DNA from: Lepidodermella squamata
Taxonomy: Eukaryota > Animalia > Gastrotricha
Direction: 5' to 3'
NCBI GenBank assembly: GCA_047495785.1
Contig: JBLDXI010000024.1
Location: 2,232,001 to 2,296,000 of the forward strand
DNA length: 64,000 nucleotides
Of this stretch, positions 1-26,199 are shown in pieces; position 1 is the stretch's first letter, and every line of letters begins with the position of its first letter. A model generated the notes under the pieces. It saw only the letters and a list, made by a program, of their open reading frames with translations, searched no databases and was not told the origin of the DNA. The translations under genes and the position numbers were made by a program.

Positions 1-174
1 AACTTTGCTAGTCGGTTTTCCAGCAGCTTCAACTCGGCCAGATTCGATTCGCGATCAGCATATGCTGCTTTCAATCTCTCCATCTCTTGCAGCATGCTTG
101 CATCAGAAACGGGCCCAGCGAAAGCCCGTAACTGCTCCTCTGCTTGCAGCTTCTTCGTTTCAGCCAAATTCGCC
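1..174 (-). CDS. Downstream coiled-coil exon of the giant GTPase gene (continues off the left edge)
   Basis: Open frame ANLAETKKLQAEEQLRAF...MLQEMERLKAAYADRESNLAELKLLENRLAK. The acceptor ttttatttaaag|G at 175/174 is phase-compatible with the donor ATG CAA AG|gtatgg at 5391/5390 (AG+G = Arg). Heptad-like composition continues the coiled coil. Confidence 0.75.
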
Positions 175-462
175 CTTTAAATAAAAGTGAGGCAATTAAA
201 TTATTGGGTGTTGGGTGTTGCTATTGACACGGACCTAGATGGTTGCGCACCAAAGGTCCCACAGGAGTCCCCAATACAAAATGCCGCATGGCGATTTAGC
301 TATCGCTGCCAAGCGTATGAGGTATATGGCGGTACCACATTTTTCGCATAGGGAAACGAATATTACGGTTACAAAAATTAAAAAAATACCGAAAAATCGG
401 CGAGCCTTTCAAGTCTCATGTAAAAACTTTCCAGTATAACCGCAATTATTTCTGATTTTTAA

Positions 463-3170
463 CTCTCATTTTTTCATTCAGCGAACTTACGCTGGTATAT
501 TAATGATTCTAACGCTTAGAGCATTGTCAGCTAATAATTTTGAGATCAGGCTGGTTTTTGTGGCTGCCGTATTTAAGACGATATTAACCGCGCGGTAAAA
601 CTTGGTATTGCATATTTTTAGTGCGCGCACTCACAGTCAGGCTTTCTCACTTGCATTTTTGACCTGTATGCAATTGCGCGCAAGATGAATTGCAACCATC
701 CTGTGCAGAACAATGCGAGGAATCGAACGAGACTACGCCCATCATCGTAGCACTCATAGTTTTGTGCCTATATGAGGCGCGGCCGATCCACCTTAAAATT
801 TCGAAATTTCGTTGTTTTTGTGAATTTTTTCGCGACGGTTTGGAAGAGACCCGGTGTATTATAATAACCATTTCAAGTACAGAATTCGACGGGCTTTCGA
901 TCGGTGAAAACCGCATGCAAATACCTATTACAGTTTTTTGCCAATAGGCCACGCGGTATAATATGAGATAAAAGACAAACCTAATAAATTTCGAAATATC
1001 GCTTCTTTAAATCTAGGTGTTATTAAACCGCGACTTTATGTACGAATATTCATTAGAATTAGGTAATTCGAGGCGCCCTTTCAAATGGTATAAGCCTCAC
1101 ATTTACCGGACGCACCAATTTGACGCCACATTTGTCTGAGTCAAAAAATTTTAATGGTGTTGACCAACTTTGCACTCTCATTTTTTTATTCACCGAATTC
1201 CCGCTGATATATTAATGATTCGAACTCGTAGCGCATAGTCAGCTAACAATTTTGAGACCAGGCTGATCGTTGTAGCCGCCGTAGTTATGGCGTCTTTCAC
1301 CGCGCGGAAGAACTCTTAACAGACATCTTGTTAGTGCGCGCTGCGCGCACTCACAGTTATAGGCTTTCTCACTTAAATTTTCGACCTGTATGCAATATTT
1401 CCCTGAGCAGCAAGTGCACGTTTTTTGCGAAATACTGCTAAGTTCCAGTGGGAATTGCAGGAAACTGCCTTAAAACGCCGTTTACTGTCATTTTTCATCT
1501 TTTCTCGAAACTAACTGCAGTTTTTGGAAAAAACTGGAAGTTAAAGCTGGAAACCAGTCACTTCGCGAAATTGACACAGTTTTTTCAAGAAACTTGGGAA
1601 TTTCGGTTTTACGACCCGAAGTTAACTGCCAGTTGAAATATTTCTACGTCACCGTTAACAAAACTTTCGAATTTTCTCTATTTCGAAGTGAGAACTGAGA
1701 AGTAGTGAACGAAAGTGAAATTCGATCCTCGACCTCTAGTTTTCATTGCTGAAAATTCCCTGGCTCGAAAAACTGCCTCCTACCTATCCGGATCAAACTG
1801 TTTTTATTTATCATGAAATTCCTCGTTTTTTTCCCGATTTTCTCTAATTTTTACTGATTATTTACCTGGATCCTAAACATACCCGAATTTTTATCGTTTT
1901 CAGCCTGAACCATTAAGAAAATAAGGAGGCTAGAAAAATTCGATAATTTTGATTTTTCGTAAAAGCAACATTTTTAATGACTGAAAATTGTCGTTCTAAA
2001 TAAAAGCTGAAATAGGGCAAAATCATTGTTATTATGGCAGTCGATTGTTGTGCACACATGCCTCGGGGTGTTGCGTAATCAGGCCATGCTTCAAAAATGT
2101 GGCTTTTTGGTTCATTCAAATCATCTTATTTTTGTTTTTAATTCCAAAACTTCAATGACATGTCCTATTTAGTAAGAATTTTCGTCCGGCCTCAATTTCG
2201 CATTTTGAGCTTCATCAATCCTTGCCGCCTTGCCACCAGGTGTGCCGACCATGCAATTTGGACAAGTTAGATATTTATCGAATATTCAAGGTAATTTTGA
2301 AATTAATTCCATTTTCTTTAATTTACCCGCAATTTTTGAAGGCTTGTCCCGCGAATCGATTTTGCTGTCCAACCAGTCTGAACGAGCCGGTCAGCAATTC
2401 GTAATGGTATCGATGAAAAATTAACAAGGTATTTTCGTGTTCAATTAATTTAAATTATTAATTTAAATTTATTTCTACAGGTTATCGGGCCTGCTCCAGT
2501 GGCGGTTTTCTGCATCGGTCACGGCCGTTGTTCGAGCATGGCGTCTCGTGAAAAATCATTCACTATTAACTTGACAATTTTTCAATTTTTTTATTGATCA
2601 GTTTTGATTAAAAAAATCATACTTGAATAAAATGATTACATCGACGGACGTGAGAAGGGTAAAACTGTCTTTTTTGAAGCTGCAGTGCAGGTCGCGTTTT
2701 TAGCAGTAAGTGCGAAGTACTAACGGCCCGAAGTGAAAGTTTTAGTATCGCAGTAAGTGACTGCGCAGTACAAACCATTTCTCACAGCGAAACTCTCATC
2801 GCGGTTCCGCTGGCCCAGCTCCGCAAAAAACTACACTTTCAACAGAATACTGTCCTCAGACAAACTCTCGCTAATTTGCATATTTAGTTTTTTTGATTTA
2901 GGCAGTTAAATGGCCCGAAATTGTCGCTCAGGGTTGTGCGCAAGATTAATTGCAACCATCCTGCGCAGAAAAATGCGAGGAATCGAACGATACTACGCCC
3001 ATCGTCGTAGCCCTCATAGTCTTTTGCCTATAAGAGGCGCGTGGAACTTGTTTCGATCCACCGCTTCTACAGTTGAAATGCGAGTTCAGTGGCGAATTTC
3101 ATGAGGAATGGGTAATTGGAGGCGCTCTATCGAACGGTAAATACCCCATTTTCACAAGGTGCGCCCATTT
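463..3170. repeat. Two diverged tandem copies of a ~0.5-0.7-kb intronic repeat; the second copy is interrupted by an insertion
   Basis: 463-674 aligns with 1174-1395. 675-781 aligns with 2935-3041 (caagat.aattgcaaccatcctg.gcagaa.aatgcgaggaatcgaacga). 1062-1091 resembles 3111-3141. Confidence 0.75.
1401..2933. mobile_element. Non-autonomous DNA transposon with CCC-initiating short TIRs (CMC/CACTA-like)
   Basis: Left end CCCTGAGCAGCAA and right end TTGTCGCTCAGGG are inverted with 11/13 matches, flanked by TT on both sides. Removing the element re-joins the second copy of the 463-781 repeat. No transposase ORF is present. Confidence 0.6.
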
Positions 3171-3819
3171 AACAGCACACTCTTTATTAAGGTCGAATTT
3201 TGAGCGAAGCCGCGCCTCCATGCATACAAGTTTCACATATGTATCGTATATCATTCGTGACTTGAACCGACGTATACTTCAATGCTCAGCGTAAAGCTGC
3301 CAAAATGAACCAAATTAATGTCGTAGCATGGTTTTTTACTGGATGTTTTCATCGGAACAACAATAACTTTAATCGGACTGTTTTTACTTAATTCATCGGA
3401 AAGTCAAAAATAAGAATATTTTTAACTTAAACCGTCGGAAAAATAGTAATTCAAAACTACATCGCATTATTACGAGCTTATTTTATCGAAAGTTTGCTGC
3501 CTTCATCGGAATATATATAACAGTAGAATTACCGTAATGTCATTAAACTCGCAAAAGGTTAATTTCGAAAACAGAGGCGGTTTTTATACCAAATTAAAAT
3601 TTGAACAATTCTCTATCAAATGAAAATGGGTTTCTTGCGCAATAAATAAAGATAAAAATGTTATACGCTCACTCAATAGTCCGCGGAGACATGCGCGGAG
3701 ATGGTTTGGAGCACTCACATGCAAGCCGTGCCGAGTGAAATCAATCAAGTTTTCAAAATTTAATGAAAATACGCGTCCCATAGAGAACGTAGTGATCAGA
3801 GAGCGCACTAACTATATAT

Positions 3820-3998
3820 CGCGGGGTGGGCGACAGAACGACCTGACTAAAATAGTAACAAATGGCGTAATGCATTTGATGCACAGAAAAAACTGGCGCT
3901 CAGTTTTTCCGGCACGCGACTGACTTGGCCGAGATGCAAAAATAGCTTTACGCTATTTGTTTCTATTTTAGTCAGGTCGTTCTGTCGCCCACCCCGCG
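3820..3998. mobile_element. MITE, ~180 bp, ~50-bp TIRs, in a TA-rich site (Tc1/mariner-like)
   Basis: CGCGGGGTGGGCGACAGAACGACCTGACTAAAATAG.AACAAAT from 3820 is the reverse complement of 3955-3998. Flanks are TATAT and TATAT. Confidence 0.85.
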
Positions 3999-4252
3999 TA
4001 TATGCGACATTGAAACAAAAAATAAACGAAAAACCCCTCCTCATTTATATTTGCCGAATTTCTCGACTATCTGGGATAACACTTTTACATGCAAATTTTG
4101 ATTTTTTGGAGATTTTTACTTGACATAGGTCATTTTATATTTCTTCCTCATTATATGCGTCACGTAATAGATCGTTTCTCGCTCTATCGTTTCATGAAAA
4201 TCCCACCGAAAATCCCACAAATTAATCCAACTTAGAGATTTGATTTAGTTGA

Positions 4253-4362
4253 GATAGTGACAAACAACTCTTTTATAGAGACAAAAGTGGATAGAGACGC
4301 CAGAAATAAAATAGAGACAAATTTAGCCACGATAGTGACAAAGTGATCTATATAAAGACAAG
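4253..4362 (+). repeat. About six dispersed copies of ATAG(A/T)GACAA at ~20-bp spacing
   Basis: Copies near 4254, 4275, 4291, 4311, 4332 and 4352; probably a transposon subterminal array. Confidence 0.55.
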
Positions 4363-4671
4363 AAAATTTCCATTCGAAATTTTTGTATCGTTAAGTATCC
4401 TACTTAGAAATACAAACACTATGGTGACCGGTGGCACCGAAAAGCTAGCTATCCACCTTAGCAGAAATTTTAACTAGGTGAACTTTCACGGCTTTAGCAA
4501 AGATCAAGGCACAAGGAGTAAATTGATATCTGAACGGCGCTCGTAGCTATCACGGTTGTTGAGAAACGCAGCCTCGAATCATACGACCCAAAAACTTTCA
4601 AATTTTCAAAATTCGCTCTCAAAACCCAAATTATTGGGTTTCATTCGTAATTTGCTTCACTACACACACTG

Positions 4672-4783
4672 AGGTTAACCGCCGGGCTCGACCACGACGG
4701 CCCGGCTTGCCGCGGGTTTAACCGGCCCGGTGGTTAACCGCGGGCCTCCGGTTAATTTTTAACCGCGGCACCCGGCACCTCTA
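4672..4783. repeat. GC-rich palindromic cluster (GGTTAACCG/CCGG), probable DNA-transposon end fragment
   Basis: Repeated GGTTAACC and CCGG palindromes ending in CGGCACCTCTA. No partner end was found in the window. Confidence 0.4.
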
Positions 4784-5390
4784 ATTAAGGCCATTCATGT
4801 TCAGCCTTCAATTGATGTTGGAGGTGGCCGTCTTAGGGTGAGTTTTTGTTAGGAAGGTAGCATTAATAAATGATGAGGCAATAGTTGTCTTATTACATCG
4901 GATTATTCAATAACCAGAACAATGCTTTTCCGATGAAAATAGACGTTTTTCGTGTATAACTAATTATTCCGATAAGTCCGATGGTTTAAGTTTAAACGGT
5001 TCGATGAAAGTTAAGTCTATGAAGTTACTTCATTGACAAATAACGATGTGCCTTTTATTGGCTATTGGCACATGATGCTAATTTCATTTTTCGCTGTTTT
5101 AGAAAAACACGCACCACGCGAGTATTAGGGTTTTCATCAACGGGGAATCGAATGGCGATATCGAAATTGCAGTCAAGGGCCCGCGATCTGAGGTCTATCG
5201 CACAGTTACGTGAATCCGACAATTCCAGTGAATTCGCCGCCCCTAGATTGCTAATGCAATGTTGAAATGCTGGTATCTAGGATCTAGGAGTTAATGATTA
5301 AACTCCCGAAAGGCGTAGTTGAATGTAAAATTTTATGCGCCAATACCCACACCGTAAATTATTTAATAGAAACACATATATAATCCATAC

Positions 5391-8300
5391 CTTTGCATGG
5401 CCACAACAATCACTGCATCATCAACTGGCAAGCCATCTTCATCAAACCCGGTCTCCTCCATTTGCTTCACCTTCTGGGTGAGCTTGACCGTTAGCCTGCT
5501 GAAGAGTTTAACAGCCTCCTCGAGCTCCTTGATCTTTTCCGGAGATACATAAGTGAGCGGATCGGATCCAGCCATCGATTGATAGGTCTCGATCAATTGA
5601 GCCATTTGATCAATTGTGCCGAACTGCTTTTGATAAGCCTCCTTCTTATCTTTTCTTTCACGGACCTTCAAATCTGTTTCCGCAATTTCCGAATTTACCT
5701 TCGTCATCTCATCTCTGTTTGCCTGAAGAGACTCATTGGCGGCATGAGAAAGGTTTTCCAAACGCGATCTCTCATCACCAAGGGCAATTGCTTCTTTTTT
5801 GCGAGCATCGAGGAGGCTTTCAGCTTCTCCCGAATTTGTGTTTCCGCTGGCGCTATCCTTCTGCAAAGCTTTCAGTTCACCCACAGCTGAACTCAGCAAT
5901 GCCTCCATTACGAGCAACTGAGACAAGCATTCCTGCCACTGCGCATATTCTGCATTAAGTGCCTCAATAGAGGACGTTAGTGGCGAATCGCTTGAGCATT
6001 TTCGAGTTTGTTCTTCGATGAATTCACAAATTTGACCAAGTTTTCTTTCAATGGCAGCTGAATGCTCGCCTCCGTCGCCCGACTTATCCATCCGCTCATC
6101 CCTGGAAAGAATCGCCGGAATAGCTCGGAATGCGGAGGACAAAGCTGATGCAAGGGCCAGTTTATTAGCGTTAAAAGCTTCGAAAAATGATTTCCGATCG
6201 AGGGAAAGTCGAGTCTTAGAAATCAGTTCCTGTCGCTTTCCCTTAAAGTTAGCCTCCTCGACTTCCTTTTCCGTAAGCAACTGTTGTAGACGGCCTTGTT
6301 GTATATGACATTCTTGTTTGGCTCTAACACACGATAGCTCATTTTCCAGCGCAATTCGAGTCGCTTTCACAGTTTCATATTCCGTCTTGGTTAGTAGCAA
6401 TTTTTGCTCGTAGCCACTGATGGCTGCCTGGTCCTCAGCGGCTAGACTAGCCTTCAGTTCCTGAAGCCGCTCTTGCTTCTCACACCGATACTCCCCAGTA
6501 GCTTCTTTATGGCCTTTACGCTCGGCACATTTCAAAAAGCATGAATTGCACTTGTTCAAGCATAGAGAGAATCGACTTCCCAAAGCGCTAATTTTGCTTT
6601 GAATCCAAGTATGAAAGGCCTTCTTTTCCTCCTGATTAAGAATCGGGTCAAGAGCAGCGAGCTCATGAGCTGCGAAGGCCCTAATGATTTCCAGACGTTT
6701 GGTTGTGAAGTCAACCAAAAGGTCGTTGAAGGAGCCCCACATTTGATTGAAGTCAACCTTGCTAAACTTGGGGTTTTGGTCGCTGAAGAGATGCTGCTTC
6801 AAGGCGGCCGTGATAGCTGAATATCCGCCATCGTCAACTTCACCCGGATAAACGAAAGCAACGCTACTCTGACTTATCTCAAGTTCTTCGTTTTCACTCT
6901 CCGGTTCTTCTTCACGCCCAGCGCGACTTTTGGGTCGCTTCGACTTCGAAGTTGAGACTTGCTCCGCTTTTGAAGTATCTCCCCATAGTGACAGGATGCG
7001 GCTCTCCGTTTGCATCATTTTGACACGTTTTATGTGCTCATCCCCAGCCTGCTCGTCGCCACGATTGACTTGGAGCATGACAACCTTCAATGATTGTAGC
7101 AGGGTCATCGAATCAGCCCAGCGATTCCTTTGTAGGCCAAGGTCCTCGTTGTTATCATCGAAAAAGGACATGCGAAGGTCGTTCAGTTCGCCAACAAAAA
7201 TGTCTCGGTTCGTGTAGTTGTTCAGACACTGGAAAACCAAGGCACCACTGAAAAGTCGCTTCAGAAAGTGATGGTCGCCTTTCTGATTCAACACTTGGAT
7301 GTTGCGCTGGAATTCCTGCTGAGCTTTCTCACGCTCCTCTGACGCCACATCACGAACAGCCATCATCAGCAGGCCCTTGAAGTAGTTTTTACCCTTCACA
7401 CGGTCAACGGCGCTGTTCAAATCACTGAAAAGACGATTCAGATACCGGTTGAAGTTCAAATCCTGGTTAAGGATGGTCACGTCACACACGGCTGCTAAAA
7501 TGGTCAGCAGTTTGACTTCTTCCAGTTCATTACGACTGATACTGAAAAGACCTTCGCAGTCAAGAATGACAAAATCCCGCTCAGCGCCATCGGACTCACG
7601 GACTAGCCTCGCATAGCTCATCCAAATTCCGTCCGTACATCGCGTTGCAGCAACACTGAATCTCGTACCGAACAGCCGATTGAGCAGGTAGCTTTTACCA
7701 GAAGATTGCCGCCCGATGATACCGATGATTTTGATTGGGCGATCACCTGCCATGGATCCTAGCACACTTTCGAGATGACCGAGGGTAACGCGATCCGCCA
7801 GCTCAGCAATCTGACTTGCTTTTTCCGTACCAAAGCGATGTCGTTTCCCGTCGATCAGTGGCACCAAGTTGTTCTCCTCAATCGTGCAAATGTGAACAGG
7901 GACGCGTGTCAGAAGTATGCAGCTGAGTTGTTCATTCGTAAACGGCGATTCCTTCATCGCCACAGCATCGCAGGGTTTGATTCCGACAGACAATTTGTAC
8001 GGGAAAGTTCTCAGGTATCTCTTCAGTTGAGTTGGTTTTAAACTGGCATTCTTCTTCGAAAGAACCAGGTCGTAGGTAATGTTTTCAGAGGAACCGATGA
8101 AATGGGCGATGGGACCATACTTCATGGAACTTGCGTAGATGATGTCAACAACAGGGTTACCCCGAACTTTCTCACGCTTCACTTCGTCGCCCATGGCCTT
8201 GAGAGAAACGTCAGAAGCCAAGCCAGGCAATATAAAACTCCTGACTGAATTCACCTCCATAATCGACAGATAGATGTTCGCGCTGTCACAAAATAACTTC

Positions 8301-10369
8301 AAGCCCCTCGATTTTTCGCTTCGGAAGGAATGGATGATTTCGAAATTCAGGTCGTAAATATCAGTGTAGCTTTCATTTCGCATGGCGAAGAATGACAGGT
8401 TTTTTGTCACGTGGACGCTCTTGTAGGGCTCTCCGTTTTTCGAGAGGAGCCGCTTCTTCACACTTTCGCGGCCGGTATTGCTGCGATGGCACCACTCTTC
8501 TGCCTCCTTTGTCGTGAAGCTGTACAGGTACAGATTACCCCGTTCATTCAAAAGCAGAGCCTCGCGGCGGCCACCCATCATAGCCATGGAGACGATTTTA
8601 CCATTCACATTATTCGGAATGAGACTAATGCCTTTGCTCGTGTATTTCAAAGACTCGTTTTCCGCTATCTCTTGAAGATGTATTGATTTTGATTCGTTAT
8701 CGAGAACCGCAATCAAAACGGATGTAGTCGATTTATCACCAGGTTCATAGGCCATCAGACAATCTCGAATATTCCAAACAGCGATTCGCTTGATCTCGCT
8801 GGCCGAAATTCGAACGAGAAGGGTGTAGGGCAGCTTGCTGCTTCCTATGGCTACAATGAACAGTTTCCCATTCCACATCGGGTAGCATGAACGAACGAAA
8901 CAAGTTCTCAGAATTTCAGTTATATCGTGAGAGACAACAGGTTTTGGAGGCAGCAAGTCTCGCAAAATCTCCGGCGTGATTTGAACCGACCATGTTGAAG
9001 GAGCGAATGTAATAGCGTCGTACTCGCCTTCGTTCTTCTGAACAGCATTCACCACGCAAGGTATCAATTTGAGGGCTGTAGAACTAGTCCGTTTGGTCTG
9101 TGATGTATCGAATATGACAGAGCATGCGTTTGAAAACGTGCAGATGGGCCGCGTTAATTCGCGACCTCTGCGATAAACAAGCTCCTCGAGGTTTTCTGCG
9201 CGAAGTATTTCCTCGATATCACGAAGCGCTTCCTTGACCTGTCCATACATGTTACGAGTGAAGAAATTGGCTAGTTCGACGCTGAAATCCTTCGCGATGA
9301 CACGGTAGTCGAAATTGAACCGGTCAGTGCTGATGCTGTAGCTTTCAATCACTTTATAGGTCAGCTGTTCGGTCAAGAAGTCGACAATAGAGGGATAGTT
9401 CTTCTTCATAGTACCTTGCTTGTGCGAGAATGAATAAGGTCGTTCGGAATACCCGACCCAGCTTGGATTTTTGCGGCGCAATGTATCCTCAATTCGAGGC
9501 AGCCATGAGCCAAGCTCTAGTGAAAATGACTTGCAGACTTCGGCAAGGTCCTTGGCATATCGTTTATGCTCAGCGGTGACTTTGTTAGTTATAGCATCGG
9601 TGGCTAAGTCAGTGCATAATCTTCGGACTTCATAAGTTACCGTAGGTGGCCTGTGCTTCGTCAGCCGGAGGAGTGAATATTTAAGGTCATGAACTTTCAT
9701 GCCAATATCTTCTTTAGCCGAGGCTTTCGACTCATCTAGGTCGGTGTAGAGAACATATCGGCTACCATTATCGTTTAGCAAGAGGCCTCGTAGTGCGTGG
9801 TCTCCCAAATCCCGCGTCAACAGCTCTGTTGAAGTGCTCACAGTGATGACTTTGATGTCGTTGTTTTTGTGCTCTTCTAGCCTGAACCTCGCCCTACCAG
9901 CTACACTCGTGTCGATGAACGGATTTTTCGGCCCAGGATAAAACTGAGTAATCTCTTCTGAACCAGGGCAAAGAAATATCGACGGGGAAATATCTTCCAA
10001 GTAACGAAACAAGGTTACCAGAATGTTTTCCTTGTTGAAACTATCTTGCTTCAAGAATGACTCCTCAGCAACAAGAAGAAAGAGGATGTTGTTATCTTTG
10101 ATAGCGGCGAACAACTTTTTGTCAACATTCTTGCCCGTAGGGAGGTCAAACTCAGGCTCAGCCAAGAGTTGCCTCGCCGTCGCAATCACTTGATCACGCT
10201 GACCGAAACACGCTGCAACACTGCTGTTGTTGTTCATGGTTATCTGCAGATTTAGTTGTTGCAAATCACGCAGATTGACGGCAACTTGCTCGATTGAATC
10301 TATCTCTGCTGCGCCAGCTACTTTGCCGTAGAAAGGCGTGTACAAGCGGCAACGAGATGATGATGCCAT
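5391..10369 (-). CDS. Giant GB1/RHD3-type (GBP/Sey1/VLIG-like) GTPase; 5-kb coding exon
   Basis: Uninterrupted ORF with first ATG at 10369. G1 GRQSSGKS (7691-7714), G2 RCTDGIWMS, G3 DCEG, G4-like VRDV, then Cys/His motif CLNKCNSCFLKCAERKGH and a long coiled coil. Splice donor at 5390. Confidence 0.85.
9171..9514 (-). repeat. Shared 115-aa domain, copy in the GTPase
   Basis: LGSWLPRIEDTLRRK...EEILRAENLEELVYR; 344 bp colinear with 11526-11869; 17 aa differences in 115. Confidence 0.95.
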
Positions 10370-10633
10370 GAATAAAACTCCTGTTGAAATTTCTAAATTA
10401 AAAATACATCTTTTATCAATTAGCAACAAGTTTTCTCTCATTAACGATGCAGCCTATAAGCATATGAATTTCCGCGTTGTTTATCATCTCAAAGTAACCC
10501 TTTTAGAAGGTGAAAACTAAGATTCGGCCAAGAAAAATCAAACGGATCTTTCCCATGTTCCCAACAGGAAGAGGAGAAGCTTTCAAATCATTTTCAAAGG
10601 ATTTAAAGTGTATATACTGTTCATTTTAGGAAG

Positions 10634-13495
10634 CTAAGGTAAGCGTGTTTCCTCAATATAATTCTGCAACTCTAAGTTTCCCTTTCTCTGAGCAAGTTGC
10701 AATGCAGTTTGATCCTTCGAGTTGCGAATATCGACAGCAGCCCCGTTTTTGACCAAGATTTTCGCCACATCAGTGAAGCCTCTGTTGACAGCAATGTGAA
10801 GCGCAGTGTTATCCGGGGTTCGACCTTTCTTCAATATTTGCGCATTGAGGTCAGCCCTTTTCAGTAGCTTAACTATGTGACGCCTGTTAAACTCAGCAGC
10901 GTAATGTAGAGCGGTACGTTTGGTTTGGCGGCTCGCATTGTTCAGTCCAACGCCATGTTCGACCAACAACTTGGCTATAGCATCGCTGCCTTCGATTGCT
11001 GAAAACATCAACGCGGTACGCCCGTCGCTGTTCACAGAGTTTCCATCAGCTTTATTCACGAGGAGGAGCTCCGCTACCTGAGTTGCATGCCGAGAGGCAG
11101 CGTACATCAACGCGGTTTCTCCTCCGTTTCTAGAAGCGTTGACATTAGCACCAGCTCGAACTAGCAGCGAGGCGCATCGGTATTGATTGTAATAGGCGCA
11201 TATCATCAATGCCGTCCACCAGTCTTTGTCGCGAAAATCGACACTTGCGTGCTTTTCGATTAAGAGCTCGACAATTTGATCGAAGCCTCGTTTGCATGCA
11301 ATTTCGAGTAAAGAGCGGCCTTTTTTGTTAATGCTATCAGGGCTCGCGCTCATTGCTAACAGAGATTTGACCTCGCCAACATCTCCTTTCTTTACCGCTA
11401 AGCTAATTTTCTCCCCGAGATCGAGAGTTAAAGCTATTGCCGGTAATTTAGAGTCAAAAGCATTTAAGACCCTTCGAAAAGCCGTAGAATAAGCCTTAAT
11501 AGTTCCAGTAAATTCTTGACCAATGCGATAGACAAGTTCCTCGAGGTTTTCCGCGCGAAGTATTTCCTCGATATCACGAAACGCTTCCTTGACCTGTCCA
11601 TACATGTTACGAGCGAAGAAATTGGCCAGTTCGTCGCTGAAATCCTTCGCGATGACACGACTGTCGAAATTAAAACGGTCTGAACTGATGCTGTAGCTTT
11701 CAATCACTTTATAGGTCAGCTGTTCGGTCAAGAAGTCGACAACAGCTGGGTAGTTTTTCTTCATGGTACGTTGATTGTGCAAAAATGCATAAGGTCGATC
11801 GACAAAACTGACCCAAGTTGGCTTTTTGCGCCGCAGTGTATCTTCGATTCGAGGCAGCCACGAGCCGAGCATTGAAAACCTCCGTCTGACTTTTTCCAAA
11901 TCTTCTGTGTATTTTTTATGCTCGGATACGACGCGATTTAAATGCGATGCGGCCGTGTCTCCGAGGTGTGCAACCAGTTCAGCCTTGACAGCTAAGGCAC
12001 TGTGATTGTAGAGCTTCAATAGTGATTCAATCAACGCGTCCACGCTGCCTCCCGCTTTAACATCAAGTTCCGCCAGCCCTGCTTCAGTTACTAAGGGATA
12101 AATATTAGTTTTTCGCCATGGGTCTAGTGTAGAGCGCAATTCCTTTTCCCGCAATACCGTAGTCAAAAATAGATAGGGGGATAGGAAAGTGAACCAATTC
12201 ATTAGATCCAAAAACTGCTCTCGAATAAGGCAACTTTGGATAAACAACGATCGTCGAGACGCGCGACCGTATCGGAATCTTTGGTATAGGAAAGGGGACC
12301 ATTTCCCTGGGATGACCCAAACTTTGTTTTAGATGAAAGGCTGATAACAACGAGCGTAACGGCGCGATATCATCCTTGGGAGGGGCGTTCAAGCCGTAAG
12401 CGAGCTCTGGCATTGGAACGGGAAATTTCACCAGCTCTACGATGGCTTTGGCACGCAACTTAGATTTCCTACCCCACCTCCTAGGTAACAAGCGAAGCCG
12501 GGACTCACCTGAGGAGGCGGCTACTGCTGGAGCCGGTCTAGACTCCCTAACCATCTCCATGTCATTCGCGCTAGCCGCCAATTCTAAGTGCCTGCAAATC
12601 TCCTGGAAATTCGGTCTGTTTTCAGGAGGCGATTCCAAGCACATCGATATCATTGATGTCAGCGCCTTGCAAAGTTCATTCTTCGGCAGCTCACCATCTT
12701 TTACCTGGAAAATTTTAGATTGGCTTAGTCAATGTTATTGGCGAAACCTCAACTTACCGGGTACTCGAAAAAGGCTAAGCGAAACGCAACCACTCCAAAA
12801 GCCCAGGCATCGGTCATTTCAGAGGGCCGGCGACTTCTTTGCAGTTCAGGCGCTTGAAATCTGGCGTCAACTTGATCCACACTCATCCTAAACAATTCAG
12901 ATTGCAAATTTCACGAAATTTCACAACTCGGTGGTGAAATTGACTCACAGATGAAATGGCCTGAGTAAACCGAGTTTCAATTGGGTACGAGTTTCGTCAC
13001 AGAAATAAATTGTATCTGTCGTTATATTCCCGCTGGTGCGTTTTCGCGAATGCAAGTATAATGCAGCTGATGCTAGTTGCGTTAGAAATGACAGGACTTC
13101 ATCCGCTGTCAGAGGCTCCTTCCCCTCTGCTGCTCAAGAGTCCCACGCGGACAGAATTCACTCAGTAAGTGATACTCTTCTGATATGGTGAATACGGAAT
13201 TGAGTTTGACGATATGTTGATGCTCGAGGGTGGTGAGTATTTTTGAAGCCTGAAACATTGCGAGTTACGAAATTGAATATTTCAAAACAAAAACCTTTAC
13301 GTCACTTAGCGCATCTTGAGCGGATTTTTTTACTTGGCTGCCGAGTTTTCGGCCGATTTTAGCGATAGATATCGTTTTGAGAACCACATAACTTTCCGAT
13401 TCGCCTTTTCGCTTAAGCAGGATTGTTGCGTTGACATCGCCCTGCTTTTTGAGTACTTGAGCTGTTTCCAAACTATCAAAAGGAGCTGGCAGCAT
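10634..13495 (-). pseudogene. NEK-like pseudokinase + shared domain + 8 ankyrin repeats (two apparent frame disruptions)
   Basis: Exons 13495-13301, 13249-12949, 12887-12758 and 12704 onward, with GT-AG introns of 51, 61 and 53 bp. Kinase motifs VVLKTI, EHQHIVKL, EFCPRGTL, APE, TDAWAFGVV and MCLESPPENRPNF are present. HRD is replaced by SGN and DFG is absent. A 1-bp shift lies near 13120, and a second frame change is needed within 12105-12328. TALxxA ankyrin repeats run to the stop at 10634. Confidence 0.75.
11526..11869 (-). repeat. Shared 115-aa domain, copy in the pseudokinase-ankyrin gene
   Basis: Same segment as 9171-9514 with no indels; long near-identical nucleotide runs in its C-terminal two thirds. 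Confidence 0.95.
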
Positions 13496-13819: not shown

Positions 13820-15058
13820 TCTATCTTATCATTCATGTTTAATCTGAAGTTTCTTGTTTTCACGCGCGAGTAATCAGACTGGAAATTCTTGAGTTATCAA
13901 CGAACTCTAGCGCCATATTTATCAGCGTTGCTTGGAATAGCCCAGGATGTCGTTATGCACTGTGCACATGGTACTGTCATGGAAGAAAATTAAATAGACA
14001 AATTATTGGTGAGAGAATGAAAATTCAGTAATTCGGTGGATCCCCGGGGACAACTGAGCGCACAGCTAAGGAGGCCCGACAAAACAAGGCTCGCGCTAGC
14101 CCACCCGCTGACAACTAGAGCCTCTCTACGGGCCATCAGAGTGGTGCTTTAACAGTGAGGGTGTAACAGGAGGTTTTTGTAAGATCTCGACAGTTTCTAA
14201 GCCACATTCATATATATTCTTATAGCTCGGGCAATCGCTTTTGCAGTTCTTGCAGCTAATCGGTCTTTCAGCATTGGAACACCTGATTCGAGATGAATCT
14301 GCTTCGTGCCGTACCATCGCGGTTTACCGAGGCAAATCTTCAGGGCAGTGTTTTGAATGGTTTGAAGGGTTGTCATGTTGTCGTCGTTCATTGAGAGAAA
14401 GGCTTCGCAGCCGAACTCCACGGCAGAGCGGACGTAGGATTTGAACACAGTAAAGCTGGTTTCGGAGGCATTCGAACTGATGGACCACACAGGCGACGCA
14501 AGCTTGAAATTTGTGAGGTGACTTTGTCCTGTATCTTTAAGACATGAGAGTTAAAATTGAGTATTTTATCAAAGTAAAGCCAAGATATGTAACTTCCGTA
14601 AGCCAGGGAAGGGTATTGCCATCAAAGACGAGTTTCGTTCTGCTATCCTCTTTCGCTAGAGAGAAGCGGATCACCTGCGTTTTATCCGAATTCAGTCTAA
14701 GCATATGTCGGTTATACCATTTGAGCACAAGGTCAAGTGTAGATTCAATTCTCTCTTTTACCTTTCGTTTAGCAAATGAGGAGCGTTCGGACATTAGTAA
14801 AAGTAAAATATCGTCAGCCAGCCCTCCGCGTTCAACAAGTGGCTGGTTAATATAGAACTTCAGCTTGTTTCTTGCATGAGTATGACTCATCGTGGAATAG
14901 CAGACACCTAATTATAAGGTGGTCACCTGAGCTGAAGTCAGGAATTCGTCTTAATCATGTTGTGAATTTCCAGAATTTCAGATAGGAGGAAAACAAATGT
15001 GATCCATTTATGGATTTGAAATTCAGTGATGTCGTATCCGAAGGGTTTTGAGAATGTG
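13820..15058 (-). mobile_element. Decayed 5'-truncated non-LTR retrotransposon (RT C-terminal fragment)
   Basis: Broken frames ADDILLL...LRLNSDKTQVIRF...VTYLGFTL and FKSYVRSAVEFG...IQNTALKICLG at about 14200-14820. A 13-bp direct repeat TTGAAGCTATCAC at 13807-13819 and 15059-15071 is a candidate TSD and defines the limits. Confidence 0.7.
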
Positions 15059-16383: not shown

Positions 16384-18006
16384 ATGATGGCTCAGCCGTC
16401 AACTTTTTCGGACGACGACGGCGAGGTCTTCCACGACCTCACCGAATCAATAAGCCAAGCTACTGAAATCGACCTGGACGCGTCTGTCGAAGAGCCAAGG
16501 GTATCAACTGATGACGGGCTAGCCGACGACAGCGATTTTCAGGTGGTCGCAAATAAAAAGGGTAAGAAATTCCGTCTCGGAAATGAAGGCGAAGCCGAAA
16601 TGGGCAACACCTCGTTCGGGTCCGATAGTACCCCCGGCCGCAACCGAAAAGTGGCCACTCGCCGGGAGGTCCCACATGGACAGGGGCCCAATACCGCTGT
16701 GAAGCAAGCCCAAAACCTGCTACGTGATCAAGCAATAGAGCTGCGAACTGTTGTAATTGACAATGTCCCGCCAAACTTTATCGATCAGAAGGCGGTTCAG
16801 GACGAACTTCAGCGTCTCCCCGAGGGCAATTACGTGTGTTACAAAATCAAGGTATTAGCCAGAGGTGGCATTCGGGTAACATTCATTGAGGCCGAGATGG
16901 CGAAGGCCGCGCTGGAGAAGCGGGACTGGCCGCCGACGCTCTTCGGTGGCAAAGCGAGGGTCCACAGATCCAAGCGATACTACGAGATCTTCCCGAATGA
17001 AACTCCCCCAGCCGCGGCGAACGACACGTCCAGTCTCCACCAAAAGGCAATCGTCGAGGGCAGGGCTGTGATCTGTACTAATTTCCCGAACGAAGTGAGC
17101 GCTGAAGAAGTCAAGGCCAACTGGTCAGATTACGTTGAGGACGTTGTGGTCACCTCGAAAAACGATCATCAAACTGTTATCTGCTTTTTCAAATCTAAGG
17201 CTATAGCTTGGAATGTTCTAAACAATGGGTTACGTTGGCAGAAAATATGGCAAATCTTCGGCAAAGAAATGAAAGCCAAGGTCAACCCGCCCAGGTGCAA
17301 CTACTGCCAATCCTTCGAGCATCTCACAACAGCCTGCAAGGCGAAGGCTGCTAAATGCGGCTGGTGCGCTGGCGCCCACATCACTCATGAGTGCAAGAAA
17401 GCTGGCAACGAAGCCTTCCGGAAGTGTGCGAACTGCGATGGTCTGCACTCGTCTGGCTGGTTTGGCTGCAAGGCAGTACGAGATGCTTGGAGTAAACTCG
17501 AAGCCAAGAATAGGTCCGCAATCCACAACATTTTAGGGTCCGACACAGCACAGCAGCAAGCCGACGGTGCAAGGCCGACGCCCGTCGCTGCCCCGCCGCC
17601 TGTCAAGAACGTATGGCTAGAGCTTCAGCAAGTGAAGACGAACAAGCTGGCATCAGCTGCCAGCACGCAAGCTCCCTCAGGACAGGAGTCTCTGGTTCAG
17701 ATTGATGACGCTAAAATCGAACAGATCACCAACGCAGTGCTAAAGAAGTTGAAAACTCAGGTTGACTCCGTGATCGCCGAAGTGCTTACCAGGCAGGCTC
17801 AGCGTATTGAAGCGCTAGAAACCAAAATGACGGAACTCATAGCTCTGCTTAAGGGCAACAAATCATTTGTCCATGTGAGCATCAACGACGGCGACCTAGT
17901 CACCGAAACGGCCCGGGATGTCCCCATGCAGCATGCCAAGGACGACTCCAAGAGCAGCTCGAAGCCAAACGCCAAAGGTAGATCGTCAAATTTAAACAAT
18001 GTTTAG
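16384..18006 (+). CDS. LINE ORF1 (gag-like nucleic-acid-binding protein)
   Basis: Three CCHC knuckles (CNYCQSFEHLTTAC, CGWCAGAHITHEC, CANCDGLHSSGWFGC), RRM-like segments before them and a C-terminal coiled coil. Confidence 0.92.
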   Translation: MMAQPSTFSDDDGEVFHDLTESISQATEIDLDASVEEPRVSTDDGLADDSDFQVVANKKGKKFRLGNEGEAEMGNTSFGSDSTPGRNRKVATRREVPHGQGPNTAVKQAQNLLRDQAIELRTVVIDNVPPNFIDQKAVQDELQRLPEGNYVCYKIKVLARGGIRVTFIEAEMAKAALEKRDWPPTLFGGKARVHRSKRYYEIFPNETPPAAANDTSSLHQKAIVEGRAVICTNFPNEVSAEEVKANWSDYVEDVVVTSKNDHQTVICFFKSKAIAWNVLNNGLRWQKIWQIFGKEMKAKVNPPRCNYCQSFEHLTTACKAKAAKCGWCAGAHITHECKKAGNEAFRKCANCDGLHSSGWFGCKAVRDAWSKLEAKNRSAIHNILGSDTAQQQADGARPTPVAAPPPVKNVWLELQQVKTNKLASAASTQAPSGQESLVQIDDAKIEQITNAVLKKLKTQVDSVIAEVLTRQAQRIEALETKMTELIALLKGNKSFVHVSINDGDLVTETARDVPMQHAKDDSKSSSKPNAKGRSSNLNNV

Positions 18007-25221: not shown

Positions 25222-26199
25222 GCAATCAAATTGCTATCAATTGAGGGATTAATTCCATTATAATGAGTAAAATTTGACTGTGACAGCTGTACTTCTCTTT
25301 TATAATTTCGCGAACTTCGAACCAGCGGACAGCGAAAAAATAATCGAAAAATGCACAATTTTTTAAAATTTCGCGTGAACTTTTTCGCAAGTTTTCTTTC
25401 CAGTGGCCTACGCTTCCGAGACACGAAAAAAATCGGAGGAGTGACTGTGCTCATCGACACTGGATCTGGCCTAGGGTCCGTGAATTTTGAATTCTTTGAA
25501 TTCCGTGAATTATTTTCTTGATGTCTCTTCTCCCGTCGCGGCGACCTGGGTTTAAGCGGTGGACAATATGACATTTTTCAACATCGGCAGTCACGAGTAG
25601 AAAAAGTAGGGGTCATTAGAAACATACATTATTCATTAGAAGAAGGAAAGGCTAAAGTGGAAGTAGGTTGAAGTGTCGTTGAAGTAGGTTGAAGCATCGT
25701 TGAAGTTCCACAATTAGGCAACGTTTTGTCGGTCTCCGTTGATGTTGGACAATATCACCATTAACCTATTTGAATTGTGAGGGATTTTGCGAAGGCAGGA
25801 CTATGATGACGTTAATAAAGTTTAGAAGATGGAGTGCTTCAATTCCCTCAGACAATATTTTTCGCACGGAGCAAAGTAAGCGAACGTGAGGATTTGAGTC
25901 AGGTGACTACCATAAGGTACGGAGCGGAGCGAGTCCGCCGTCAGCATGAAGTGGACGTCGAGCGTTGAGCTGCAAATTACGTGGAAATTAGCAATAAAAT
26001 TTGTTGTGTAGGTTGTCTAAATGGGATCAATAGTAATGCCGGCATTAATTTCAAAGTACAAATTGGCGTGGTAAAAACGTGAACAGCTCCATATGACGAA
26101 GCTTTCTTAATGAGGTAATTCAACCCGAAATTTGCGCAGACCGGGGATGCTTACTGATTGCACGTGGAATATGTCATAACTTTAAATTGTCAAACGATA

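What the first reader, a model, noticed from the sequence alone, without database searches (positions are those of the whole stretch)
9171..11869. Adjacent pseudokinase-ankyrin and giant GTPase genes share an unrecognised 115-aa domain: candidate paired sensor/effector system
Seen: two tandem genes with unrelated architectures carry the same 344-bp segment (9171-9514 vs 11526-11869; 98/115 aa identical, no indels). Weaker similarity extends about 70 aa further N-terminal (SLLRLTKH/SLLKLYNH; EHKRYAKDL/EHKKYTEDL). I do not recognise the domain. Known: shared homotypic modules link partners in innate immunity (death-fold and TIR domains), pseudokinase and/or ankyrin proteins act in such pathways (RNase L, MLKL, RIPK4), and GBP/VLIG GTPases are cell-autonomous immune effectors. 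Inference: the domain may be a new homotypic interaction module or decoy coupling an ankyrin sensor to a GTPase effector.
Basis: partly seen in the sequence, partly recalled or inferred. Interest (0 to 1): 0.9.

Follow-up and report, generated by a model that had tools for sequence, protein, structure and literature searches.

The report
GTPase domain copied into neighbouring pseudokinase-ankyrin gene
A dead-kinase/ankyrin gene carries a copy of a helical domain from the giant GTPase gene next to it, and the near-identical core is a patch of gene conversion in a tandem gene array, not a proven interaction module; the kinase-ankyrin copies are all damaged.

Summary
Both genes lie on the minus strand. 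The giant GTPase (G3, ORF 5363-10441) and the pseudokinase-X-ankyrin gene (K3, 10634-13495) share about 204 aa at 63% identity, with a core of 98/115 identical residues.

X is the GTPase family's own domain. It is a self-contained helical bundle between conserved blocks, and it sits at the same place in paralogs on two other contigs and in a 2646-aa relative from a metagenome. It matches no Pfam family, no solved fold, and nothing in 1.84 billion proteins.

The window holds the third of three tandem units [K][G] on contig C24. K is a pseudokinase-ankyrin gene that acquired X. The near-identical core is a sharply bounded tract of about 360 bp, imported from a GTPase gene into K3, in an array full of gene conversion.

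K genes exist only in this array, and all three are damaged:
- K1 has a frameshift and a stop in X, and its ankyrin array is lost.
- K2 is a 5' relic.
- K3 has a derived 16-bp frameshifting deletion in a kinase exon.

Past purifying selection is detectable. No RNA data were available. A sensor/effector pairing is neither supported nor excluded. First readers of this scan had already noted the same architecture at K1 and the tandem amplification.

The parts
5391..10369 (-). G3, giant VLIG/URGCP-type GTPase, exon 1 (about 1660 aa). Start MASSSRCRLYTPFYG at 10369. Predicted donor AG|GTATGG at 5391/5390. The open frame itself runs 5363-10441.
   Evidence: ORF list. Pfam URGCP_GTPase/RHD3/GBP hits. 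Start conserved in G1/G2. Donor read from sequence and compared with G1.
7154..7753 (-). G domain of G3 (P-loop GRQSSGKS)
   Evidence: Pfam GBP 34.3 bits (cut-off 21.1), URGCP_GTPase 52.6 (cut-off 55), RHD3_GTPase 37. 93 homologs, many named VLIG-type G domain proteins.
9092..9703 (-). X domain in G3 (aa 247-450 of the ORF), a helical bundle of about 200 aa and the most variable block of the family
   Evidence: BLASTP. AF2 pLDDT 81.7 alone and 82-92 within aa 1-480. Per-block identities.
9153..9515 (-). G3 side of the high-identity tract
   Evidence: blastn 87.3% over 363 bp. Sliding identity 75-97% inside and 35-55% outside.
175..5390 (-). Intron of G3, swollen by an insertion of about 5.2 kb (the same intron is 59 nt in G1)
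   Evidence: blastn colinearity G1 vs G3. Splice sites read.
1..174 (-). Start of G3 exon 2 (an 859-aa exon with a C-terminal VWA_4 domain). It runs off the window start.
   Evidence: ORF region -2400..176. VWA_4 E 4e-9 on the G1 copy. Acceptor TTAAAG|G.
10634..12090 (-). K3 last exon, X plus ankyrin array, open frame intact (predicted acceptor CCCTTAG|TA at 12091/12090; stop at 10634-10636)
   Evidence: ORF. Sequence read. Pfam ankyrin hits.
11447..12079 (-). X domain copy in K3. It starts within a few codons of the exon start.
   Evidence: BLASTP/tblastn. Alignment A1.
11508..11870 (-). K3 side of the conversion tract (GTPase-type sequence inside K-type flanks)
10658..11398 (-). Ankyrin repeats of K3 (at least 6)
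   Evidence: Pfam Ank_2 E 3.4e-44, Ank E 8.6e-43.
12509..13495 (-). K3 pseudokinase exons 1-4 (13301-13495, 12949-13249, 12758-12887, 12509-12704), with GT..AG introns of 51, 61 and 53 nt
   Evidence: Sequence. Alignment with K1. Pfam kinase hits on K1/K3 exons.
13109..13131 (-). Lesion in K3: a 16-bp deletion between 13131 and 13130 relative to K1 and K2, which shifts the frame into a TGA at 13109-13111
   Evidence: K1/K3 alignment. K2 retains the 16 bp. A unitig of run X1 covers 12777-13247 with no difference.

Best explanation
The window holds the third unit of a three-fold tandem array on contig C24. All units are on the minus strand, and each is a K gene (pseudokinase, X, ankyrin) followed by a G gene (N-terminal domain, X, middle region, VLIG-type G domain, coiled coil, then a second exon with VWA). 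X is a native, fast-evolving helical domain of the GTPase family.

Inferred: a pseudokinase-ankyrin gene next to the GTPase picked up a copy of X by partial duplication, placing it at the start of its ankyrin exon. That old copy diverged to about 68% nucleotide identity.

Shown: around the time the units were triplicated, about 360 bp of GTPase-type sequence overwrote the core of X in K3 by gene conversion. This gives the 98/115-aa block with sharp edges. The array as a whole is a mosaic of conversions.

Shown: K genes were under purifying selection for a time, and all three copies now carry disabling lesions.

Inferred: K3 today most likely makes no full-length protein. If K ever worked with G, the likeliest way is that its X copy mimicked or associated with the GTPase's X region. 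This remains a guess.
For: - X sits at the same position in G1, G2 and G3, in the C29 and C33 paralogs (A1, A4), and within a colinear full-length alignment to P0002 (2646 aa, 32% identity from aa 4).
- The genome holds only 7 X copies, all in GTPase or K genes.
- Three tandem units are seen by blastn and tblastn.
- K kinase exon 1 occurs only three times in the genome. Its nearest kinase relatives are at most 38% identical, and at least one lies just upstream of an ankyrin array on the same strand (C31).
- The tract edges are sharp. K3-G identity is 75-97% inside and 35-55% outside. K3's N-flank is closer to K1 (0.51-0.79) than to G (0.38-0.55), while its tract is closer to G than to K1 (0.58-0.73).
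- Inside the tract, K3, G3 and G1/G2 are about equidistant (86-88%). With K1 as outgroup, each lineage has about 17-21 private changes.
- Synonymous divergence (dS) between K3 and G in the tract is 0.37-0.43, similar to the highest dS windows between G paralogs (0.3-0.39). Other windows have dS near 0, which shows pervasive conversion.
- Constraint: K3-private tract changes are 11 synonymous to 6 nonsynonymous (p 1e-4). For K1-K3 kinase exons the nonsynonymous/synonymous rate ratio (omega) is 0.33.
- Lesions: K3 has a 16-bp deletion, derived and present in a read-derived unitig that may come from the assembly's own sample. K1 has a frameshift and a stop in X with the ankyrin array reduced to a relic. 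K2 has only 5' kinase relics with several indels.
Against: - The 1.46-kb X-ankyrin exon of K3 is still fully open, and its X tract shows purifying selection. K3 may therefore have been inactivated only recently, may be polymorphic, or may be expressed as an X-ankyrin protein from an internal start.
- No RNA data could be consulted.
- The order of events (original acquisition of X, then conversion) is inferred from identity profiles among only five copies.
- The direction of some exchanges inside the tract is ambiguous. G3 itself is unusually diverged from G1/G2 there.
- Keeping [K][G] together through three duplications is also what a functional pair would show.
Confidence: 0.68

Rival explanations
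1. Paired sensor/effector. The pseudokinase-X-ankyrin protein senses something through its ankyrin array and couples to the giant GTPase by X-X association, or it acts as a decoy of the GTPase's fast-evolving X surface.
For: - K and G have stayed adjacent and co-oriented in all three units.
- Only about 265 bp separate the K3 stop from the G3 start.
- X folds as an autonomous domain.
- X is the most variable block of the GTPase family, as expected for a contested surface.
- K3's X tract and the K kinase exons show past purifying selection.
Against: - All three K copies are disrupted.
- K exists nowhere else in the genome.
- The GTPase paralogs on C29 and C33 and the P0002 contig have no K-like neighbour.
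- Block duplication alone explains the adjacency.
- The high identity is explained by conversion, not by constraint.
- There is no expression evidence.
Confidence: 0.14
2. Conversion reservoir. The K-linked X copies, functional or not, serve as donors that feed variant sequence into the GTPases' hypervariable X core, much like pseudogene-templated diversification.
For: - Between G3 and G1, the X core has the highest nonsynonymous divergence of the gene (dN 0.127 vs 0.046 overall) and high synonymous divergence (dS up to 0.385).
- 21 tract sites group G3 with K3 against G1/G2.
- A cluster of 12 G3-private changes within 50 bp (9426-9476) looks like a micro-conversion from an unsampled donor.
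Against: - With K1 as outgroup, most G3=K3 sites are ancestral states, not shared derived ones (14 vs 3). They therefore do not require K-to-G transfer.
- Only one clear tract exists, and its direction is G to K3.
- There are only three donors, and two of them are decayed or lack X.
Confidence: 0.1
3. Assembly artefact: the duplicate segment or the K3 frameshift comes from mis-assembly or collapsed haplotypes.
For: Tandem paralogs at 85-95% identity are hard to assemble. The only read set found probably comes from the same sample as the assembly.
Against: Unitigs at about 100x word depth cover 10211-11611, 11713-12774 and 12777-13247 with no differences or gaps. No alternative indel was reported. 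The two X copies differ at 46 of 363 positions, so they are distinct loci.
Confidence: 0.03

Closest known systems
VLIG/URGCP-type very large GTPases (Pfam URGCP_GTPase PF25683; the 'VLIG-type G domain'), in particular the >2000-aa GTPase-VWA proteins of ciliates, rotifers and Anaeramoeba
   Same: G3 has the same G-domain type, a similar size (about 2500 aa with exon 2), and a C-terminal VWA_4 domain like many hits. The best relative, P0002, is colinear over 1340 aa.
   Different: The N-terminal 880 aa, X included, matches no described family. URGCP_GTPase scores just under its gathering cut-off (52.6 vs 55). An interferon or immune role, known for vertebrate VLIG-1 and GBPs (my own knowledge), is untested here.
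Chimeric genes made by partial tandem duplication, with ectopic gene conversion between the duplicated segments
   Same: A segment of one gene lies inside its neighbour. There is a conversion tract of about 360 bp with sharp edges inside older, diverged homology. The array paralogs have mosaic relationships.
   Different: The captured piece is a complete, autonomously folding domain placed exactly at an exon start between a pseudokinase and an ankyrin array. It evolved under constraint for a time.
Pseudokinase-ankyrin gene families of this genome (NEK-like dead kinase plus ankyrin arrays, noted by other agents of this scan). Functional analogies are RNase L, RIPK4 and integrated-decoy immune receptors.
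   Same: K shows the same kinase-then-ankyrin order. Its catalytic motifs are degenerate (HRD reads SGN, DFG reads LLR). Ankyrin genes are hugely expanded in this genome (2394 first-look candidates).
   Different: K's kinase is at most 38% identical to any other kinase in the genome. K has only three copies. It alone carries X between the kinase and the ankyrins. The decoy analogy is a resemblance only; no partner binding or sensing was shown.
Death-fold and TIR homotypic interaction modules
   Same: Only the idea: one domain shared by two proteins that might associate.
   Different: X is a bundle of about 200 aa and seven helices with no Pfam hit and no fold match (best VIA Z 7.3, Foldseek E >= 0.076, Atlas TM by the query <= 0.44). 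It is not a six-helix death fold of about 90 aa, nor an alpha/beta TIR domain.

Membership tests
VLIG/URGCP-type large GTPase | G domain matching the URGCP/VLIG/GBP-RHD3 class, with a P-loop GxxxxGKS | tested here: met
   GRQSSGKS is present. Pfam GBP 34.3 bits (cut-off 21.1), URGCP_GTPase E 3.9e-14 but 52.6 bits against a cut-off of 55, RHD3_GTPase E 3e-9. There are 93 homologs down to E 1e-101, many named VLIG-type G domain proteins.
VLIG/URGCP-type large GTPase | Very large single polypeptide (>1500 aa) with the G domain in the middle. In the protist/rotifer branch there is also a C-terminal VWA domain. | tested here: met
   The 1692-aa ORF plus the 859-aa second exon with VWA_4 (E 4e-9) are joined by GT..AG splice sites. 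P0002 carries RHD3_GTPase, URGCP_GTPase and VWA_4.
VLIG/URGCP-type large GTPase | GTP binding or hydrolysis, and inducible immune function | not testable with these tools
   No biochemical or expression data are available (one search found no RNA run).
Protein kinase fold, pseudokinase class | Kinase-domain homology | tested here: met
   PK_Tyr_Ser-Thr E 3.1e-13 (50.1 bits, cut-off 23.1) on K1 exon 2. Weaker hits on exons 3 and 4 line up colinearly with profile positions 53-258.
Protein kinase fold, pseudokinase class | Loss of catalytic residues (HRD Asp, DFG Asp) | tested here: met
   Read from the sequence...LHSQKLISGNITTD... where HRD is expected, and KLGLLRPF where DFG is expected. The beta3 Lys (VVLKTI) is kept.
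Ankyrin-repeat protein | Tandem 33-aa ankyrin repeats | tested here: met
   Ank_2 E 3.4e-44, Ank E 8.6e-43 with 6 stretches.
Death-fold / TIR homotypic modules | Sequence or fold match to a death-fold or TIR domain | tested here: not met
   No Pfam hit over X. The AF2 model is an all-helical bundle of about 200 aa. PDB Foldseek, VIA wide and the Atlas give only generic helical matches.
Gene-conversion tract between paralogs | A block of high identity with abrupt edges inside older, much more diverged homology, with the tract's phylogeny differing from that of its flanks | tested here: met
   Identity is 75-97% inside and 35-55% outside. K3's flanks group with K1, while its tract groups with the G genes.
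Paired sensor/effector or integrated-decoy system | Conserved genetic linkage of intact partners beyond a single duplication block | tested here: not met
   K genes occur only in the C24 array. The C29 and C33 paralogs and the P0002 contig have no K-like neighbour. All three K copies are disrupted.
Paired sensor/effector or integrated-decoy system | Physical or functional interaction, and co-expression | tested here: inconclusive
   The complex prediction gave no verdict. No RNA run holds the locus.
Transposable-element protein (origin of X) | Match to a TE protein, or a multi-copy dispersed distribution | tested here: not met
   The genome has only 7 X copies, all inside GTPase or K genes, and X has no Pfam hit.

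The most novel reading that the evidence does not exclude
The pseudokinase-X-ankyrin gene is (or recently was) a working partner of the giant GTPase. Its X copy, kept GTPase-like by gene conversion, would either mimic the GTPase's fastest-evolving surface as a decoy for a pathogen factor, or dock onto the GTPase to couple ankyrin-based sensing to GTPase activation. That would make it an animal/protist analogue of integrated-decoy immune pairs, built on an undescribed helical domain.
Probability: 0.12. Interest if true: 0.65.

Novelty: new member of a known kind. Interest (0 to 1): 0.3.

Why it matters
The result is a worked example of how a new multidomain gene arises: a pseudokinase-ankyrin gene captured a whole domain from the giant GTPase next to it. 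It also shows how gene conversion in a tandem array can produce a striking "conserved module" signal that is not evidence of function. And it defines the gene model and an undescribed, fast-evolving helical domain of a poorly studied family of about 2500-aa VLIG-type GTPase-VWA proteins. If the pair proved functional, it would give a testable model for how such giant GTPases are regulated. On present evidence, however, the captured-domain gene is decaying.

Tried and rejected
- Profile of six X copies against 1.84 billion representative proteins: one spurious repeat hit only. The library did not return this genome's own proteins, so a blank says little about close relatives.
- hhalign of the X profile against the matching region of P0002: not significant on its own (probability 1.9). 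Homology there rests on the colinear full-length BLASTP alignment.
- Fold searches with the X model gave only generic helical bundles. Foldseek PDB: best E 0.076. VIA wide: best Z 7.3. ESM Atlas: TM by the query <= 0.44. Death-fold and TIR readings were rejected.
- Complex prediction of X(G3) with X(K3): no verdict (scores 0.52, 0.00, 0.00). This is neither support nor evidence against binding.
- RNA evidence: no RNA run holds the locus. The one holder is a DNA-like run kept as contigs, probably from the assembly's own sample. Read laying was given 5,001 letters.
- TE origin of X: rejected (7 copies, all genic).
- Rescue of the K3 frameshift by a tiny intron: considered and judged unlikely. 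The only GT..AG span is about 20 nt, while the gene's real introns are 51-61 nt.
- The literature search on VLIG/VWA GTPases found nothing specific to this family.
- The organism was not identified. Other agents' notes call it an unidentified animal.


Full report
**1. Observation**

The two genes lie on the minus strand.
- ORF 5363-10441 encodes 1692 aa with a URGCP/RHD3/GBP-type G domain at aa 897-1096.
- ORF 10634-12247 encodes 537 aa with at least six ankyrin repeats.

Similarity between them:
- The repeat finder reports 9153-9452 vs 11508-11807 at 88%.
- blastn reports 363 ungapped bp at 87.3%.
- BLASTP aligns 204 aa at 63% identity, E 4e-77.
- The core is exactly 98/115 identical.

**2. 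What the genes are**

*G3 (the GTPase).* G3 starts at MASSSRCRLYTPFYG (10369), the start shared by its paralogs. Its first exon ends at a predicted donor at 5391/5390. The next exon is an 859-aa ORF with a C-terminal VWA_4 domain (E 4e-9).
- In paralog G1 the intron between them is 59 nt.
- In G3 the same intron holds a 5.2-kb insertion, and exon 2 runs off the window start.

The protein is therefore about 2500 aa. Relatives of its G domain are the large "VLIG-type G domain" proteins of ciliates, rotifers and Anaeramoeba, many with VWA. The best relative, P0002 (2646 aa, single exon, on a metagenome contig), aligns colinearly from residue 4 over 1340 aa at 32% identity.

*K3 (the pseudokinase-ankyrin gene).* K3 has four short kinase exons (13495-12509), with GT..AG introns of 51, 61 and 53 nt. 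A longer predicted intron follows, and then one exon (12090-10634) that begins with X and continues into the ankyrin array.
- Pfam confirms a kinase fold (E 3e-13 on the K1 copy).

**3. Where X comes from**

The genome (121 Mb, 151 contigs) holds only seven X matches:
- three GTPase paralogs in a row on C24 (G1, G2, G3; 82-83% aa identity in X);
- K3;
- a degenerate copy upstream of G1 (K1);
- two distant GTPase paralogs on C29 and C33 (23-27%).

In all GTPases X sits at the same position, between a conserved N-terminal block and a conserved block beginning LKLxPC..N.VQ (alignments A1 and A4). X is therefore the GTPase family's own domain.

It is the family's most variable block. G3 vs C29 is 25-27% identical in X against 47% before it and 39% after. 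G3 vs P0002 is 15-16% against 25% and 32%.

AlphaFold models X as a seven-helix bundle with pLDDT 81.7 alone, and 82-92 when embedded in aa 1-480, whose N-terminal part is poorly modelled.

Nothing recognisable matches it:
- no Pfam hit;
- no real hit among 1.84 billion proteins;
- Foldseek PDB E >= 0.076, VIA wide Z <= 7.3, Atlas TM by the query <= 0.44.

It is not death-fold- or TIR-like, and it is not a TE protein.

**4. The array**

Self-comparison of C24:2192001-2254000 shows three tandem units, all on the minus strand: [K][G exon 1][VWA exon].

K kinase exon 1 occurs only three times in the genome, once per unit. The nearest other kinases are at most 38% identical. At least one of them (on C31) lies just upstream of an ankyrin array on the same strand. 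Ankyrin genes are hugely expanded in this genome. K is thus a pseudokinase-ankyrin gene that uniquely carries X between its two parts (inference).

No K-like sequence lies next to the C29 or C33 paralogs, or within 10 kb of P0002.

**5. Why the core is so similar**

Sliding-window identity shows abrupt edges:
- K3 vs any G gene is 75-97% between about 11530 and 11880 (G3 9175-9530).
- It is 35-55% on both sides.

In the N-terminal flank K3 is closer to K1 (0.51-0.79) than to G (0.38-0.55). In the tract it is closer to G than to K1 (0.58-0.73). GTPase-type sequence therefore overwrote the core of an older, diverged K-type X. This is a gene-conversion tract, direction G to K3.

Inside the tract K3, G3 and G1/G2 are about equidistant (86-88%). 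Polarising with K1 gives 17, 18 and 21 private changes per lineage.

Synonymous divergence (dS) between K3 and G in the tract is 0.37-0.43. This is similar to the highest dS windows between G paralogs (0.3-0.39). Other windows of the G genes have dS near zero in changing pairs, which shows pervasive conversion across the array. The tract is therefore about as old as the triplication, not very recent.

**6. Is K alive?**

Past constraint is visible:
- K3-private changes in the tract are 11 synonymous to 6 nonsynonymous (binomial p 1e-4 against the share of synonymous sites).
- K1 vs K3 kinase exons give dS 0.26, dN 0.086, and a dN/dS ratio (omega) of 0.33.

Yet every copy is now damaged:
- **K3** lacks 16 bp in kinase exon 2 that K1 and K2 both have, so the deletion is derived. 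It shifts the frame into a TGA at 13109-13111. A roughly 100x unitig of the only run that holds the locus covers 12777-13247 without any difference, so this is not an assembly slip, although the run is probably from the same sample.
- **K1** keeps intact kinase exons, but it has a frameshift within X, an in-frame stop after X, and only a relic ankyrin repeat.
- **K2** keeps only 5' kinase exon relics with several indels.

K3's 1.46-kb X-ankyrin exon is still open. Inactivation may therefore be recent, or an X-ankyrin product may be made. No RNA run was available to decide.

**7. Interpretation**

*Shown:*
- a shared, undescribed, autonomous helical domain;
- its home in the GTPase family;
- the conversion tract;
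- the tandem array;
- the lesions.

*Inferred:*
- capture of X by a pseudokinase-ankyrin gene through partial duplication;
- a former function for K;
- present decay of K.

The sensor/effector pairing is not excluded, but nothing beyond adjacency supports it, and block duplication explains the adjacency. A complex prediction of the two X copies returned no verdict. I put the pairing at about 0.12-0.14.

A second non-standard reading is that K-linked X copies feed variation into the GTPases' hypervariable X core. It gets about 0.1, because outgroup polarisation makes most G3=K3 sites ancestral.

**8. Earlier notes of this scan**

First readers had already flagged three things: the K1 copy ([quoted passage not shown]), the tandem amplification, and the giant GTPase of this window. 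My tests agree with those observations. They add that K1 and K3 are both disrupted.

**9. Verdict**

This is a real and tidy case of domain capture plus gene conversion in a fast-turning-over array of an understudied giant-GTPase family. It is ordinary in kind, and the functional hypothesis is open but weak. Interest 0.3.

Noticed in passing
window 175-5390: The intron between G3's 5-kb exon and its VWA exon carries an insertion of about 5.2 kb. The same intron is 59 nt in paralog G1. The insertion has internal direct and inverted repeats but no long ORF.
   Followed up: partly
G000:C24:2220574-2225631 (L011, outside the window): Paralog G2 has a deletion of about 2.5 kb that fuses the GTPase exon in frame to the VWA exon (1686-aa ORF). 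This removes about 500 aa after the G domain and the first ~310 aa of exon 2.
   Followed up: partly
window 5391-10369 vs G1/G2 (L013, L011): The three GTPase paralogs are mosaics. Synonymous divergence in 100-codon windows swings from about 0 to 0.39, and the closest pair changes along the gene. This indicates pervasive gene conversion.
   Followed up: partly
window 9426-9476: Twelve G3-private substitutions fall within 50 bp inside the X core, where K3 agrees with G1/G2. This may be a micro-conversion from an unsampled donor, or local positive selection.
   Followed up: no
window 16384-20908 (+) and 14197-14890 (-): A LINE-like retrotransposon with a 540-aa ORF1 and a 969-aa ORF2 (endonuclease plus reverse transcriptase). 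A reverse-transcriptase-like fragment lies on the other strand, upstream of K3.
   Followed up: no
window 26158-28737, 29730-32126, 41069-43690 (+): Three long single-exon ORFs (798-873 aa) with ANF_receptor ligand-binding domains. This is a small tandem family of receptor-like genes.
   Followed up: no
L007 / L023 (G000:C33:1940815-1951400): A 486-aa ORF holds only the N-terminal block, X and the start of the middle region of the GTPase family. Directly upstream on the same strand is a 1716-aa ORF that begins in the pre-G-domain region. This could be a split or rearranged paralog pair.
   Followed up: no
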